DNA of 64,000 nt from Lytechinus pictus (taxonomy: Eukaryota), in assembly GCF_037042905.1 (NCBI RefSeq), contig NC_087246.1:51088001-51152000 (forward strand), written 5' to 3'. The position numbers were made by a program, and so were the translations under genes. This document shows positions 58,181-62,343 of the stretch, in pieces. The notes beneath the pieces are model-generated. The model was not told where the DNA came from and made no database searches. It saw only the letters and a program-made list of their open reading frames with translations. Every line of letters begins with the position of its first letter. The first letter of the stretch is position 1.

Positions 58181-58300
58181 ATGTAGACAGGATCCTTACC
58201 TGTTCAAGGTGTTGAAGTACTACACTCAGAACTACAGACTCTCTCAAGCATTCCTAGAGGCTTGGAAGCATTATCAACACATCGGTCTTCCTCCCATAGA
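58181..58300 (+). CDS. ANKAR: ANKAR-like exon
   Basis: RCRQDPYLFKVLKYYTQNYRLSQAFLEAWKHYQHIGLPPI. CAG acceptor and GA|GTAAGT donor; phase 2-2. Confidence 0.88.
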
Positions 58301-58335
58301 GTAAGTAGCAAACTTTATATATGTATATTTGATAT

Positions 58336-58620
58336 TAATAATAATAATAATAACAGTATATTTACCCAGGGTAGCCACTTCAGTTCCGAAAACTGTTCTC
58401 CCAGCGGGCCCTGCTATTATTACCCTACCTATTACCTATTCGGTGCACACAGCTTTTTGAGGAATTACTTCCTGCCGGTACCCATTTACCTCACCTGGGT
58501 CGAATGCAGCACACTGTGGATGAATTCCTTGCTGAAGGAAATTACGCCATGGCTGGAATTTGAACCCACAACCCTCTGTTTCAAAGTCCGGAGACTAATC
58601 CACTGGGCCACGACGCTCCA
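58336..58620 (-). mobile_element. tRNA-derived SINE (family 2) with (TTA)n tail
   Basis: Minus strand reads TGGAGCGTCGTGGCCCAGTGG (A box)...GGTTCAAATTCC (B box)...GACCCAGGTGAGGTAAATGGGTACC, ending in a simple-repeat tail. Confidence 0.85.
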
Positions 58621-58630
58621 TTGGATACTA

Positions 58631-59238
58631 CAGTGCGTATCAAAAAAAAGTTTACACATTGAAAAAACCCTGGGAATTAAAAATATACAACATGTGGGTA
58701 ATTTTTTCACATATAATCTTAGGTTTGGGTCTCATCTATCCAATGAAAGTAAAAGTTTTGACAGAATGTTACACTTGAGTGAGCACTGTCCATTTTTGTA
58801 AAGCTCGCAGAAATCTGTTTGCGCAGAAATGCTCGTTTTCACGCTGTGTCAAGGAGAAAGGGCAAAATCAAACTTACCCTCAGAAACATTTATCATACAT
58901 TTCCCTTGCACTTTTAGTCAATTGAAATAAAACGGATACATTCAAGCATTTCGTAACAATTTTGTCACCCAAATTGAAATTTTAACACTTAGTAAGCTCA
59001 ACCTTTACCCTTTTTGTGCCAGCTGGATCTGAGGACATAACTGAATCTGAACAAAAGTTTATATCAGACATCTCCAGCATGGTGCTCACTCAAGCGGAAA
59101 TATTTTTCGACTGTTATATCGCCATTTGCTTAAATGGATCTGTACCAATGTTATAATGTGGAAAAATCTTCAGGATATTACAAATGTATAATTTTACAGG
59201 ATTTTTTCTAAGTGTAAACTTTTTTTTGATACGCACTG
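58631..59238. mobile_element. Tc1/mariner-type MITE, intact
   Basis: TA|CAGTGCGTATCAAAAAAAAGTTTACAC ... GTGTAAACTTTTTTTTTGATACGCACTG|TA. Confidence 0.92.
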
Positions 59239-59250
59239 TAGTAGTTCAAA

Positions 59251-61171
59251 ATGGGATACCAGAAATATTCCACGTGTAGCACGGGACCGTTTTGGGTGGG
59301 GGAGGATCTTTTACTTTACAATAACAACAGTGCAGCGGAAGGATTTTTTTATACGAAGAATCCCCACCCTGTCCGTCTACAGAGGTAGAAATTAAATAAA
59401 ATACTATTAGGTTGTAATTATTTTACAAGGTAATAATCACACATTACAGAATCAAACACCATCAATCAACAACATTCACACTATGTTATTAACTAATGTA
59501 AATAATAATACTCAATAAAATAAACTAGCATACTCATTATATAAAGGATATATGTTCCTTTAATTCTAAACTAACAAATGAACATTATATACATGATATT
59601 TACAAAGATAAAAGATGATGTAACTCTTGGCTACATAATTATTTGAATGAGTATGAACATATAGTTCAGATGATACTTAAAAACTTAACTGGACATAACT
59701 TTAAAACAGTTGTTGAACAACTACTGTTATCAAGACTAACATAATGACATTGAAACTAACATAGCATTGAGGGTCTCACTGCAGAAAGAAATAAAATGTG
59801 GATGCCGTTCATGATCAGAAGACCAGTGACCTGAGAATCAGGAAAAAGAGAAGTTACATGATAGTAACTTCATGGAGGATGTTTCCTCTTCATCTCGAAA
59901 GTTGTGTATTCAGTTTAATCAAAATATGATTTTACTATTTCTAATATTAAATTCAAATATCAAACTTCATGTTAAATACTTTATAACAACTAGGATTAGT
60001 AAATCATTTTACAATAGTATATCAAATCAATACTGAAATGGTTTAGCACAATGAAATTCAGGAAAGTCTTTAATCAGATACATTAGAGTCCGCACAGTAT
60101 TAACGCGGCAAGATAGGGAACTCAGCCTATCTGCTTGACCAGAATAATACCGTTTAGTTGTTTTGGATTCGCGACTTTCTTAAAATTTGTAATTCGCAAA
60201 GTTCAAAAGGCTCAACTATAAAACTCGCACCATGCTCGTGCTGCTAGACAATCATGAATAACAAGTGCTTTACCATGAACAATAATCGGAACTGGTTAGT
60301 AACAATTATAAGAAATTCAAACAATCAATAAGATGTAGATTATAGAATAGTATCTATCATCAGATATGTAAAACTAAACTTTAAATATTATTAAATCGAA
60401 GATTGATAATACACCAAATGTGTAAAAGCAATTGTGGACAAATAACTTTAAATCGAATATTAAATTTATAAGATCAATTATCCAATAATCTTATAAACTT
60501 TGTATAACAAGCAATCAATTTAATATCAAATACAGTACTGAAATATAGGATGACTTTAGGATCTTACCTGAGAATCAGGAAAAAAAGAGAAGTTACATGA
60601 TAGTAACTTTATGGAGGATGTTTCCTCTCCATCTCGAAAGTTGTGAAGAAGATGCCTCCAGAACTTCTATATAAAGGTATTTTCGACAGTACCATTATTT
60701 TTTAAAAGGGGTGTGTATATTTATAACTAGTAATACTTGTTGATCCTTAGTCATCTCTTTTAATAAACAAAAACCAGAAAACAATAACTGCTTACCCCTT
60801 TAGGGTAGCAAAGATGGAAGAGTCCATCAACTTTTCCCCAAAATACTACTACGTCATTCATGTCATTCACGTCATTATTTCTGAGAATAATGACCACCAG
60901 ACCCTGACTCATACTACCCAGAACTGACCATTGGCTCTCTCTTTCGCTCTCTCTCTCTCAGTCTGTACAGAGGTCATAAAAACTCTCTGCTCTGACCATC
61001 CAGTTATAGATGTTCAATATCCATACATGGGGGGGGGGTATTACAAGGTCTTTATCCTTTTCACTACATATAATATGTTATGTAGCACCAAAAGGGTGCT
61101 ACACACAGGTTAAAGGATATTGCACGAATGCAATATCCGACCTAATCAGTGACATATTTCTAGTATCCCAT
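59251..61171. mobile_element. ~1.9-kb element bounded by imperfect TIRs, in ANKAR intron
   Basis: ATGGGATACCAGAAATAT (59251) vs ATATTTCTAGTATCCCAT (ending 61171). GTGTAGCAC/GTGCTACAC is also mirrored. No clear TSD. Confidence 0.5.
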
Positions 61172-61587
61172 GAAGAAAGACCAATTAATGTAATTTTTAT
61201 CTTGATCATTATGCATTAGACATTGTGGTAGTGTCCATGATTAGACCAAAGTCGTTCACACGATGATAAAAGGTGTACATCCAATGGAAGGGTGAGGTAC
61301 ATAGAGATGTGCTACTATAAGAGACCTCCAAACTATCCCTGCATAAACTTAATTAGAGTGAACTTTCTGTAATTCTCATCAAATCTTGACAAATAGATAA
61401 TGAACAAACATACTATTTAAAGTCCTGCTAAACTTACAAACAGCTTAGTAAAATGGCCCTATGCTGACTCATGCACTAGATGTGTACATATAATGTCATA
61501 GAATAGATTTACACATGTACATGTACTTACCTGTATAATTGGTTGGAATTCTGTAAATTGACTTGCGTTTCATTTGTTCATCCGCAG

Positions 61588-61658
61588 TACTGCACAGAAG
61601 CCTTGTCTGGTTGGCAAGAAGAATATTCCATTCCTGAGCAATATCAAGAATCCAAATG
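61588..61658 (+). CDS. ANKAR: ANKAR-like exon
   Basis: CGCAG acceptor, open frame TAQKPCLVGKKNIPFLSNIKNPN, and G|GTATGT donor. Phase matches the preceding exon. Confidence 0.75.
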
Positions 61659-62343
61659 GTATGTTTTTCACTCATCTTAAATTAAAATATGCTAAATATC
61701 TTAAGTTCATGAAATCATGGCAATGTCTCATGTTTCTTTCTTCAGATATTAATATTTTAATGTATTCAAATATTTAAATCACCAAGAATACATTTTATTT
61801 TCATCAGCCTGGGTGATCATCATAATCTTCCAACATTGTAATAATCTCTTTTCAGACCCCCCCCCAAAAAAAAAGAATTTATCTTATTTTATATTAAGTC
61901 CATTTAAATTGATATACTTTGATGATGTTTAAGTGGTGGTGCATAGGTGAATAGTGAATTTCATATAATGAGAGGAATCTGCGAGATAGCCTGTGGCCAC
62001 CCATAATATCAGATGCTATTGTTAATATTGAAGGAATAGTAGAATCTAGACAACTTATTACTAGATTTATAGGACCAATCCCTTATCTTGGGAGCAGATT
62101 TTACATCATATCTCTAGATGTAAAAAAAAAAATGATTTATATAATGAAATTTTAATTTTAAAAATTTTTTTTTTTTAAATCATGGCTTTGCATGAAACTA
62201 TATTACATACTACGCATTTATATTTTTTGATATAATGAATGCAGAGGAGTTTATATAACCATGTCTGATCCTAAAAGCCTTCAATTTTATGAAACATTTG
62301 TATATGTCCTGTGCTTTCCCAACTCTCATTAATGCTTGTGCAG

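What the first reader, a model, noticed from the sequence alone, without database searches (positions are those of the whole stretch)
59760..60880. Hidden antisense transcription unit whose first exon is duplicated as if from spliced cDNA
On the minus strand, in order: tandem TGACGT/TGACAT sites (60851-60875), a TATA-like TATATAG starting at 60673, an Inr-like TCA with +1 at ~60644 (29 nt downstream), a 77-nt exon and a CAG|GTAAGA donor (60568/60567). About 740 bp further on, the same segment recurs (59906-59829). It starts at the predicted TSS and ends at the donor, but continues GTCACTGG into a short ORF (MNGIHILFLSAVRPSMLC). The duplication boundaries match TSS and splice site, which suggests reintegration of a spliced cDNA 5' end (half-finished intron loss, or a Penelope-like pseudo-LTR). 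Alternatively, the exon end (pyrimidine tract + CAG) also works as an acceptor, so the duplication could have created a 737-nt intron or a recursive AG|GT site.
Basis: partly seen in the sequence, partly recalled or inferred. Interest (0 to 1): 0.7.

Follow-up and report, generated by a model that had tools for sequence, protein, structure and literature searches.

The report
Solo retrotransposon LTR with self-renewing repeat
The "hidden gene" is a leftover end-piece (solo LTR) of a recently active gypsy-type jumping gene, and its duplicated 80-base start segment is kept identical across the family in a way that suggests the element sometimes copies itself from RNA lacking the stretch between the two copies.

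Summary
Every motif and coordinate is present, and the 78/80-nt repeat (A1 60645-60566, A2 59906-59829, minus strand) is real.

It is not a host gene. Window 61103-59275 (minus) is a 1,829-bp solo LTR (TG..CA, 4-bp TSD) of a Ty3/gypsy-type retrotransposon. The genome holds about 30 LTR copies. Full-length elements carry gag, RT-RNaseH-integrase, a PBS and a PPT, and one has 100% identical LTRs.

The unusual part is family-wide. Every LTR has A1, a ~660-nt spacer X, then A2, with invariant edges. A1 and A2 co-evolve. Two lineages differ at about half of A's middle 40 nt in both copies, while the flanks of A2 are nearly identical. So A2 is overwritten from A1.

One chimera switches lineage at A2's first base, and a short-LTR relative joins U3 to A at about that base.

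Best reading: strong-stop cDNA made from a leader lacking X lands on A2 and rewrites it. X could be removed by splicing (CAG|GTAAGA to A2's CAG) or by reverse transcriptase jumping between the repeats.

RNA-seq was too thin and mostly antisense, so it decides nothing.

Earlier notes of this scan report LTR introns in unrelated BEL/Pao elements of this genome, not in this family.

The parts
59275..61103 (-). Solo LTR, 1,829 bp, of a Ty3/gypsy-type LTR retrotransposon. Starts TGTAGCAC and ends GTGCTACA.
   Evidence: About 30 dispersed copies share these ends. At least 10 copies have perfect 4-bp TSDs. Paired copies flank gag-pol.
61104..61107 (-). Left target-site duplication, TGTG.
   Evidence: It matches the right copy CGTG except for one CpG-to-TpG-type change.
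59271..59274 (-). Right target-site duplication, CGTG.
60646..61103 (-). U3: the promoter and enhancer part of the LTR.
   Evidence: Position is relative to the TATA box and A1. The first ~126 nt cannot be aligned with the type II lineage.
60851..60874 (-). Three CRE-like half sites, TGACGT / TGACAT / TGACGT, 229, 220 and 211 nt before A1.
   Evidence: Present at the same distances in most of the 27 copies, in both lineages.
60667..60673 (-). TATA box, TATATAG, 28 nt before A1.
   Evidence: Present in 26 of 27 copies at -28 or -30. No conserved TATA precedes A2.
60566..60645 (-). Repeat copy A1, 80 nt. Predicted transcription start and first leader segment. Ends CAG|GT.
   Evidence: The first and last 20 nt are conserved between lineages, while the middle 40 nt differs at 50 per 100 nt.
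60562..60567 (-). Consensus-like 5' splice site GTAAGA, directly after A1's CAG.
   Evidence: GTAAGATCC follows A1 in 25 of 27 copies. The 21-mer across the junction is exact in 24 genomic copies. Its use is not shown.
59907..60565 (-). Spacer X, 659 nt, AT-rich. Candidate intron body together with A2.
   Evidence: Found only inside this LTR family. Almost no RNA reads in its middle, but overall depth is too low to interpret.
59914..59919 (-). ATTAAA, 13 nt before A2. Candidate poly(A) signal.
   Evidence: Conserved in both lineages. Function not shown.
59829..59906 (-). Repeat copy A2, 78 nt. Its pyrimidine-rich end ...TTTTTCCTGATTCTCAG| could act as a 3' splice site. It is followed by GTCACTGG.
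   Evidence: It is an island of lineage differences inside near-identical flanks and always matches its own A1.
59275..59828 (-). Downstream LTR part (remaining R plus U5), almost identical between lineages.
   Evidence: 0-2 near-fixed differences per 100 nt. In full-length elements it is followed after 2 nt by the PBS TGGTAGCAGAGCGAGG.
59756..59812 (-). Short upstream ORF, MNGIHILFLSAVRPSMLC.
   Evidence: The ATG is kept in nearly all copies but the length and end vary. The region is almost invariant anyway, so this gives no evidence of coding.
59559..59564 (-). ATTAAA, about 265 nt after A2. Second candidate poly(A) signal.
   Evidence: Conserved in the window, C19_3.9 and C12 LTRs. Function not shown.

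Best explanation
Window 61103-59275 (minus strand) is a solo LTR of a Ty3/gypsy-type LTR retrotransposon family that was active recently in this genome.

The family's LTR carries a fixed architecture: U3, A1, X (~660 nt), A2, then U5. A2 is not an independent copy. It is repeatedly overwritten with the sequence of A1 during replication.

The mechanism I think most likely has three steps.
1. An RNA starts at A1.
2. The minus-strand strong-stop DNA made on its leader lacks X and one A. Either X plus A2 was spliced out (donor CAG|GTAAGA after A1, acceptor at the ...CTCAG end of A2, which restores exactly the letters of A followed by U5), or reverse transcriptase jumped from A2 to A1.
3. That short strong-stop DNA then pairs with A2 and U5 at the unspliced 3' end of a genomic RNA and is extended through X, A1 and U3. 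This regenerates the full LTR with A2 copied from A1.

Shown: solo-LTR identity, family architecture, co-variation and its direction, and the joints at A's first base.
Inferred: the start site at A1, use of the splice sites, and the strand-transfer route.

Sub-confidences: solo LTR of a gypsy-type element 0.97; replicative A1-to-A2 overwriting via an X-less cDNA 0.7; splicing rather than an RT jump as the way X is removed 0.45.
For: LTR identity:
- About 30 copies with TG..CA ends.
- Perfect 4-bp TSDs in at least 10 copies.
- Same-orientation pairs 9.2 kb apart flank a PNMA-like gag and a 1,525-aa pol with RVT_1, RNase H, the integrase zinc domain and rve.
- A PPT and a tRNA-type PBS are present.
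- The C12 element's LTRs show 0 mismatches.

Architecture fixed: A1, X and A2 are present in all 27 LTRs analysed. Junction counts are 29 and 30.

Co-variation:
- Type I and type II A differ at about 17 of 80 positions, in both copies.
- Partner shuffles reach the observed A1-A2 similarity in 0 of 20,000 trials (type I) and 458 of 20,000 (type II).
- C2_63.041 has type I A1 and A2 around a type II-like X, and groups with type II LTRs on a tree built without A.

Direction: near-fixed lineage differences are 0-2 per 100 nt in X 701-1197 and U5, but 50 per 100 nt in A2's middle. That equals A1's middle, which lies in a generally diverged module.

Not maintained in place: A1-A2 differences rise with end-branch length (Spearman 0.59, p = 0.0016).

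Joints at A's first base:
- Chimera C7_17.8 is type I through X, then type II from A2 into U5.
- The short-LTR element on C2 reads about 110 nt of U3, then a single type II A, then U5, in both its LTRs, and has the same PBS.

Splice signals and TATA are conserved.

Precedents:
- RT deletes sequence between direct repeats (PMC3187697).
- Spliced MLV SD' RNA is co-packaged with genomic RNA (PMC2925334).
Against: - No RNA evidence. In three rRNA-depleted runs, depth over the LTR was at most 7 with 6% of reads sampled. There was no pile-up of read starts and no joints. Most reads are probably antisense, judged from the neighbouring SINE.
- A few reads cross X into A2 and A1 into X, so unspliced or antisense RNA or DNA exists.
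- The spliced leader would be identical in letters to A2-U5, so splicing cannot be seen in short reads and is inferred only from signals.
- The same splice sites exist in the 3' LTR copy of the RNA. If splicing were efficient, X-less LTRs should be common, yet only one old X-less copy (C10) and one short-LTR element were found among about 35.
- The poly(A) site is unknown.
- The chimera is a single case, and its last ~70 nt of X carry mixed diagnostic sites.
- I could not fetch the C10 and C2 relatives, so their layouts rest on BLAST coordinates and one pattern match.
Confidence: 0.6

Rival explanations
1. This is the same solo LTR, and A2 is overwritten through an X-less strong-stop DNA. But X is removed only by reverse transcriptase jumping from A2 to A1 on an unspliced leader (direct-repeat deletion). 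The GTAAGA donor and the acceptor-like end of A are not used.
For: Direct repeats in retroviral genomes are deleted precisely and often by intramolecular template switching (PMC3187697). No spliced RNA was seen. The scarcity of X-less LTRs fits a rare RT event.
Against: It does not explain why the repeat unit ends exactly at a consensus donor (CAG|GTAAGA) that is kept in 25 of 27 copies. It also does not explain why A's last 20 nt, a pyrimidine tract plus CAG, are conserved while its middle changes fast.
Confidence: 0.25
2. The duplication is an old, functionless internal LTR repeat. A1 and A2 stay alike through DNA-level gene conversion, either in place or between copies, and not through replication.
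For: Gene conversion between LTRs is known in general (my own knowledge). Observed A1-A2 differences total 55, below the 139 expected if whole end branches were post-insertion.
Against: - A1-A2 differences grow with copy age, up to 13 of 80 in the oldest copy.
- The change is directional: A2 is the anomalous island.
- An 80-bp tract is short for conversion.
- It does not explain the chimera or the short-LTR joints at A's first base.
- It does not explain the fixed edges at TATA+28 and at a donor.
Confidence: 0.1
3. One reading: a hidden antisense host transcription unit whose first exon was duplicated at this locus by reintegration of a spliced cDNA, or a Penelope-like pseudo-LTR.
For: Promoter-like motifs and a donor are present.
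Against: The whole 1.83-kb unit is a dispersed LTR with TSDs. The duplication is present in every copy, so it predates this insertion. The encoded pol has an rve integrase, not a Penelope-type enzyme set. There is no local transcription signal.
Confidence: 0.02

Closest known systems
Ty3/gypsy (Metaviridae-type) LTR retrotransposons and their solo LTRs
   Same: TG..CA LTRs, 4-bp TSD, tRNA-type PBS, PPT, gag, and pol in the order RT, RNase H, integrase. Solo LTRs arise by LTR-LTR recombination.
   Different: The LTR is long (1.83 kb). It contains an 80-nt direct repeat around a 660-nt intron-like spacer, and the two copies co-evolve.
Retroviral R region and first (minus-strand strong-stop) transfer
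   Same: A behaves like R. It sits at the predicted RNA 5' end, it is the point where lineage chimeras switch, and it is homogenised by replication.
   Different: Both copies lie within one LTR. Classical R is present once per LTR, and only the 5' and 3' LTR copies are homogenised.
MLV SD' RNA / splice-donor-associated retroelement (PMC2925334, PMC10496198)
   Same: A spliced retroviral RNA is co-packaged with genomic RNA and can be reverse transcribed.
   Different: There the spliced form yields a shorter provirus. Here the proposed product regenerates the full LTR because the intron's 3' end repeats exon 1.
Direct-repeat deletion by reverse transcriptase (PMC3187697)
   Same: Precise removal of one repeat plus the spacer by template switching. 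This is a splice-free route to an X-less strong-stop DNA.
   Different: In vectors the deletion is the end product. Here the spacer is retained in nearly all genomic copies.
Intron creation by duplication of an AGGT-containing segment (PMC3265369, PMC4974935)
   Same: AG|GT is present at both repeat ends, so splicing from the first GT to the second AG restores the original RNA exactly.
   Different: It is not a simple tandem duplication, because a unique 660-nt spacer separates the copies. It also lies in a retroelement LTR rather than a host gene.
BARE LTR with two TATA boxes and separate RNA pools (PMC3735527)
   Same: One LTR gives RNAs with different 5' ends and different fates (translation versus replication), and splicing is involved.
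   Different: BARE has no repeated start segment. Its intron lies in the coding region, and only unspliced RNA is replicated.
BEL/Pao elements with LTR introns noted by this scan in the same genome (s1-323330, s1-317467; AI notes)
   Same: A proposed intron lies inside an LTR of a sea-urchin retrotransposon.
   Different: It is a different superfamily. There the splice junction is proposed to form a self-primer. Here the PBS is tRNA-type, and no complement to it longer than chance exists in the LTR.

Membership tests
Ty3/gypsy-type LTR retrotransposon (family of the window's LTR) | Two direct LTRs flanking an internal coding region | tested here: met
   C12, C13 and C19 pairs are 9.23-9.26 kb apart in the same orientation. 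The C12 LTRs are identical.
Ty3/gypsy-type LTR retrotransposon (family of the window's LTR) | LTR ends TG..CA with short terminal inverted repeats and a 4-6 bp TSD | tested here: met
   Ends are TGTAGCAC...GTGCTACA. TSDs include TAAG, CATG, CGTG, CAAG, TTAT, CTTG, AATC, TACA, TGTT and CTAT. The window copy has TGTG/CGTG.
Ty3/gypsy-type LTR retrotransposon (family of the window's LTR) | pol domain order RT, RNase H, integrase (integrase after RT) | tested here: met
   RVT_1 at residues 411-571, RNase H at 657-786, Integrase_H2C2 at 976-1032 and rve at 1045-1142.
Ty3/gypsy-type LTR retrotransposon (family of the window's LTR) | Aspartic protease upstream of RT | tested here: inconclusive
   No Pfam protease hit in pol residues 1-417 even at E <= 1.
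Ty3/gypsy-type LTR retrotransposon (family of the window's LTR) | PBS complementary to a tRNA 3' end, and a PPT before the 3' LTR | tested here: met
   TGGTAGCAGAGCGAGG lies 2 nt after the LTR. Its complement ends in CCA and, without CCA, recurs in tandem tRNA-gene-like clusters. The PPT is AAGGAGGGAAGAG. The identity of the tRNA (initiator Met-like) is from memory only.
Solo LTR (the window copy itself) | A complete LTR flanked by a TSD with no adjacent PBS, PPT or internal sequence | tested here: met
   The flanks are unrelated to the PBS or PPT, and the TSD is TGTG/CGTG with one CpG-type mismatch.
Penelope-like element / pseudo-LTR | Penelope-type RT with GIY-YIG endonuclease, and pLTRs arising from tandem or inverted partial copies | tested here: not met
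   pol carries an rve integrase and no GIY-YIG hit. The LTRs are true direct repeats with TSDs.
Spliceosomal intron (X plus A2) | GT..AG ends with a consensus donor, a pyrimidine tract and a conserved acceptor | tested here: met
   CAG|GTAAGA, and ...TTTTTCCTGATTCTCAG|G. Both are conserved in both lineages.
Spliceosomal intron (X plus A2) | RNA in which the intron is removed | tested here: inconclusive
   Depth was at most 7 and no joints were seen. The product would be identical in letters to A2-U5, so short reads cannot show it.
AGGT-duplication intron | Tandem duplication with no unique spacer | tested here: not met
   A family-specific spacer of about 660 nt separates the copies.
Self-priming LTR retrotransposon (Tf1-like, or the BEL/Pao type of the scan's notes) | PBS complementary to the element's own leader or splice junction | tested here: not met
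   The longest complement is 6-7 nt, equal to shuffled controls.

The most novel reading that the evidence does not exclude
This retrotransposon family replicates, at least occasionally, through a leader RNA from which an LTR-internal intron has been spliced. The intron ends in a copy of exon 1, so the short strong-stop cDNA of the spliced RNA can still land on an unspliced 3' end and rebuild the full, intron-containing LTR. That would be a retroelement design which tolerates leader splicing without losing its intron, and it leaves a visible signature: A2 is rewritten from A1 in every such cycle.
Probability: 0.3. Interest if true: 0.75.

Novelty: new variant of a known kind. Interest (0 to 1): 0.5.

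Why it matters
At this locus the answer is ordinary: a decaying solo LTR, not a hidden gene.

The family is more interesting. It carries a natural record of which RNA 5' end feeds minus-strand strong-stop synthesis. Direct repeats are normally unstable in retroelements, yet here an 80-nt repeat pair is fixed and homogenised in one direction.

If splicing is involved, it would show that spliced leader RNA takes part in productive reverse transcription of a gypsy-type element. It would also show how an intron can persist inside an LTR.

The family also gives a clean system for studying first-strand transfer from genome sequence alone: it has intact copies, identical LTRs, and marked A1/A2 variants.

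Tried and rejected
- Exact-pattern search for promoter-A-U5 copies lacking X found none. A looser pattern for the C10 copy also found nothing, so the C10 X-less layout rests on the coordinates.
- Rfam and ARAGORN found nothing in the neighbouring repeat. Its tRNA-like head was recognised by eye.
- RNA reads gave no start pile-ups, no joints within the LTR and very low depth, so they give no verdict on the start site, splicing or the poly(A) site.
- RNA folding of A shows that a GGAG...CUCC hairpin is possible in both types, but the z-scores (-1.7 to +0.6) are not significant.
- Self-priming was rejected.
- X as a captured independent repeat was rejected.
- The short ORF after A2 gives no evidence of coding.
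- A tandem-LTR origin of the repeat was considered. No similarity beyond A was seen between the two halves.
- Phrase searches found no described natural LTR intron in retrotransposons. That is weak evidence of absence.
Lineage comparisons used pairwise alignments and counts only.
Full report
**1. Observation**

- TGACGT / TGACAT / TGACGT at 60874-60851.
- TATATAG at 60673-60667.
- A segment starting CACAAC at 60645 and ending CAG|GTAAGA, with the donor GT at 60567-60566.
- The same segment again at 59906-59829, there followed by GTCACTGG and a short ORF from 59812.

The repeat finder reports the two copies as 64 nt at 97% plus 23 nt at 96%, 737-739 nt apart. Joined, they are 80 and 78 nt with two substitutions and a 2-T length difference. 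I call them A1 and A2, and the roughly 660 nt between them X.

**2. What the locus is**

The stretch is one copy of a dispersed repeat of about 1.83 kb in the window's own 812-Mb genome. The search returned 48 matches, about 30 of them near full length at 82-93% identity.

Several copies lie as same-orientation pairs 9.23-9.26 kb apart, on C13, C12 and C19. Between them, on the strand corresponding to the window's minus strand, are two ORFs:
- a 380-aa ORF with a PNMA-type capsid domain;
- a 1,525-aa ORF with RVT_1, RNase H, the integrase zinc domain and rve, in that order.

The repeat begins TGTAGCAC and ends GTGCTACA. At least ten copies are flanked by perfect 4-bp target-site duplications. 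In full-length elements the 5' copy is followed after two bases by TGGTAGCAGAGCGAGG. The complement of that sequence ends in CCA, and without CCA it recurs in tandem tRNA-gene-like clusters. The 3' copy is preceded by the polypurine tract AAGGAGGGAAGAG. The two LTRs of the C12 element are identical over about 1.82 kb, and its ORFs are open.

So window 61103-59275 is a solo LTR of a recently active Ty3/gypsy-type LTR retrotransposon. Its sense strand is the window's minus strand, and its TSD is TGTG/CGTG, which differ by one CpG-type change. The three CRE-like sites (-229, -220, -211) and the TATA box (-28 or -30) are kept in almost all 27 copies analysed. A Pfam protease was not detected.

**3. 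The duplication is a property of the family**

All 27 LTRs analysed contain A1, X and A2 with the same edges. Genome-wide, the junction A|GTAAGATCC occurs 29 times and A|GTCACTGGT 30 times, almost always paired 700-740 nt apart. X is found only inside this family. The duplication therefore did not arise at this locus.

**4. A1 and A2 co-evolve, and A2 follows A1**

Two lineages exist. Type I includes the window copy and is mostly solo LTRs. Type II includes the intact elements. Their A segments differ at about 17 of 80 positions, and the same differences are present in both A1 and A2.

Variants of narrower lineages are also shared by both copies, for example in C4_30.3, C18_17.0, C15_18.3 and C31. 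Shuffling the A2 partners among copies reaches the observed A1-A2 similarity in 0 of 20,000 trials for type I and in 458 of 20,000 for type II.

Near-fixed differences between nine young type I LTRs and six type II LTRs are strongly mosaic:

| Region | Near-fixed differences per 100 nt |
|---|---|
| U3 (127-458) | 5-10 |
| A1, middle 40 nt | 50 |
| A1, first and last 20 nt | 5 |
| X 701-1197 | 0-1 |
| A2, middle | 50 |
| U5 | 0-2 |

So A2 is an island of divergence inside about 1.1 kb of almost identical sequence, and it matches the A1 of its own diverged upstream module. That gives the direction: A2 is overwritten from A1.

Copy C2_63.041 shows the same thing in another combination. Its U3 and A1 are type I, its X is type II-like, and its A2 is type I. 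On a tree built without A it groups with type II LTRs with 98/95 support.

A1-A2 differences increase with a copy's end-branch length (Spearman 0.59, p = 0.0016), from 0 in young elements to 13 in the oldest copy. So the copies are alike at insertion and then decay. Homogenisation belongs to replication, not to the resting copy.

**5. Joints at A's first base**

One of the 27 LTRs, C7_17.8, is a chimera. U3, A1 and X are type I, while A2 and the first part of U5 are type II (ATGAATGGC...TTCTTCC), so the switch lies at the X/A2 boundary. A few mixed sites in the last ~70 nt of X were seen.

An element on C2 (63252815-63260808) has two short LTRs that align as LTR positions 1-99, about 9 unaligned bases, then from 3 nt before A2 to the LTR end. 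Its single A is type II with one difference and is joined directly to GTCACT in both LTRs. The family's PBS follows.

A copy on C10 aligns as U3 66-458, one A of about 66 nt, then U5. That is an X-less LTR at 78-80% identity.

All three are what a minus-strand strong-stop DNA reading "A then U5", ending at A's first base, would produce on landing in three different places:
- on A2 of another lineage's RNA;
- illegitimately within U3;
- on A1.

**6. Mechanism**

In standard reverse transcription, U5 and part or all of R come from the RNA's 5' end, and U3 comes from its 3' end. An unspliced RNA starting at A1 would hand A1 and A2 on separately, so it cannot explain the overwriting. An RNA starting at A2 would leave A1 a passive part of U3, so it cannot either.

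Overwriting in the A1-to-A2 direction follows if the strong-stop DNA is made on an A1-initiated leader from which X and one A are missing, and if it then pairs with A2-U5 of an unspliced 3' end and is extended through X, A1 and U3.

X could be removed in two ways.

(a) *Splicing.*
- A1 is followed by CAG|GTAAGA in 25 of 27 copies.
- A2 ends in a pyrimidine tract plus CAG.
- Splicing from the first GT to the second AG restores exactly the letters of A-U5.
- A's first 20 nt (start site, transfer homology) and last 20 nt (splice signals) are conserved while its middle changes fast.
- The repeat unit ends precisely at a consensus donor.

(b) *A reverse-transcriptase jump from A2 to A1.* This is the well-documented direct-repeat deletion (PMC3187697).

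I favour (a) slightly because of the donor coincidence and its conservation, but nothing here shows splicing.

The scarcity of X-less LTRs suggests that X-less cDNA is occasional rather than the rule: one old copy plus one short-LTR element among about 35. The poly(A) site is unknown. Two ATTAAA motifs, 13 nt before A2 and about 265 nt after it, are conserved.

**7. RNA evidence**

Three rRNA-depleted paired-end runs of the same species, read at about 6% each, were laid on window 58300-62300 at 82% likeness or more.
- Depth over the LTR was 0-7.
- Depth was nearly nil in the middle of X and in 59506-59773.
- There was no pile-up of read starts and no joints inside the LTR.
- Reads over A2 carry the general type I letter at 59871, so they come from other copies.
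- A few reads extend from A2 into X, and from A1 into X.
- Most LTR reads have the first mate on the minus strand.

The neighbouring tRNA-derived SINE has its sense on the minus strand and shows a 7:1 excess of first mates on the plus strand. If the SINE's RNA is mostly sense, which I assume, this implies a first-mate-antisense library. On that basis most LTR reads are antisense to the LTR and could be host pre-mRNA.

These data neither show nor exclude LTR-driven transcription. They cannot reveal the proposed splice, because its product is identical to A2-U5.

**8. Comparison with known systems**

The locus is an ordinary solo LTR. The family's LTR is unusual.
- Classical R is present once per LTR.
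- Direct repeats are unstable in retroviral genomes (PMC3187697).
- Spliced retroviral RNA can be co-packaged and reverse transcribed (MLV SD', PMC2925334), but it yields shortened proviruses.
- BARE uses two start sites in one LTR for different RNA pools (PMC3735527).
- Duplication of an AGGT-containing segment can create an intron (PMC3265369), but that duplication is tandem.

Phrase searches found no described natural LTR intron in retrotransposons.

Earlier AI notes of this scan say the genome is a sea urchin. They report LTR introns in unrelated BEL/Pao elements, proposed to build a self-primer. That idea fails here: the PBS is tRNA-type and has no complement in the LTR beyond chance.

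**9. Verdict**

- Observation: confirmed.
- Interpretation: partly supported. There is a real promoter and a cDNA-like duplication, but of a retrotransposon LTR, inherited rather than local.
- Novelty: a new variant of a known kind, through the self-renewing repeat and the possible LTR intron.
- The mechanism is inferred from genomic copies only.

Noticed in passing
window 58360-58620 (minus strand): A tRNA-derived SINE with A and B boxes. It dominates the RNA-seq reads laid on the stretch, with depth up to about 9,000 at 6% sampling and 7:1 strand bias. Many reads run on into unlike sequence, so they come from other copies.
   Followed up: partly
window 58626-59243: A MITE-like element with 47-nt terminal inverted repeats (94% complementary) starting TACAGTGCGTATC, which resembles Tc1/mariner ends. 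RNA depth over it is about 100-300.
   Followed up: no
window 59251-59273 and 61149-61171: A 23-nt inverted repeat (87%) brackets the solo LTR just outside its TSD. The LTR seems to have landed inside a small palindromic element of about 110 bp.
   Followed up: no
L062/L020 (G000:C12:12883202-12895021); also L003, L007, L064, L065: The youngest full-length element (identical LTRs) has no TSD (TAGT versus ATTG). Several copies are preceded by AGT, the last three bases before the 3' LTR. This could reflect unusual end processing or recombination between elements.
   Followed up: partly
G000:C2:63252815-63260808: A related element with short LTRs: about 110 nt of U3, a single type II A, then U5. 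It has the same PBS with one mismatch. The sequence could not be fetched.
   Followed up: partly
G000:C10:21885825-21886798: An X-less LTR relative (long-type U3, one shortened A, U5) at 78-80% identity. It is either ancestral or a by-product of X-less cDNA.
   Followed up: partly
L064 (G000:C3:8060738-8069633): An internally deleted element (LTR, 2.3 kb, LTR) in which the PBS complement occurs twice, 31 nt apart (C3:8064050 and 8064081).
   Followed up: no
G000:C2:34248089-34271093 and C10:7143477-7156253: Tandem clusters holding the PBS complement without CCA (CCTCGCTCTGCTA+ACA). They are probably arrays of the primer tRNA gene. The acceptor stem looks like initiator tRNA-Met, from memory.
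   Followed up: no
LTR positions 479-518 and 1218-1255 (window 60625-60586 and 59886-59849): The middle 40 nt of A differs at about 50 per 100 nt between two lineages whose neighbouring sequence differs at 0-10 per 100 nt. This is fast, concerted change at RNA positions roughly +20 to +60, and its cause is unknown.
   Followed up: partly
window 61081-61103 (minus strand): The first 23 nt of the LTR form a perfect 9-bp hairpin, TGTAGCACC-CTTTT-GGTGCTACA. The hairpin's 3' arm ends in the same 8 nt (GTGCTACA) as the LTR's own 3' end.
   Followed up: no
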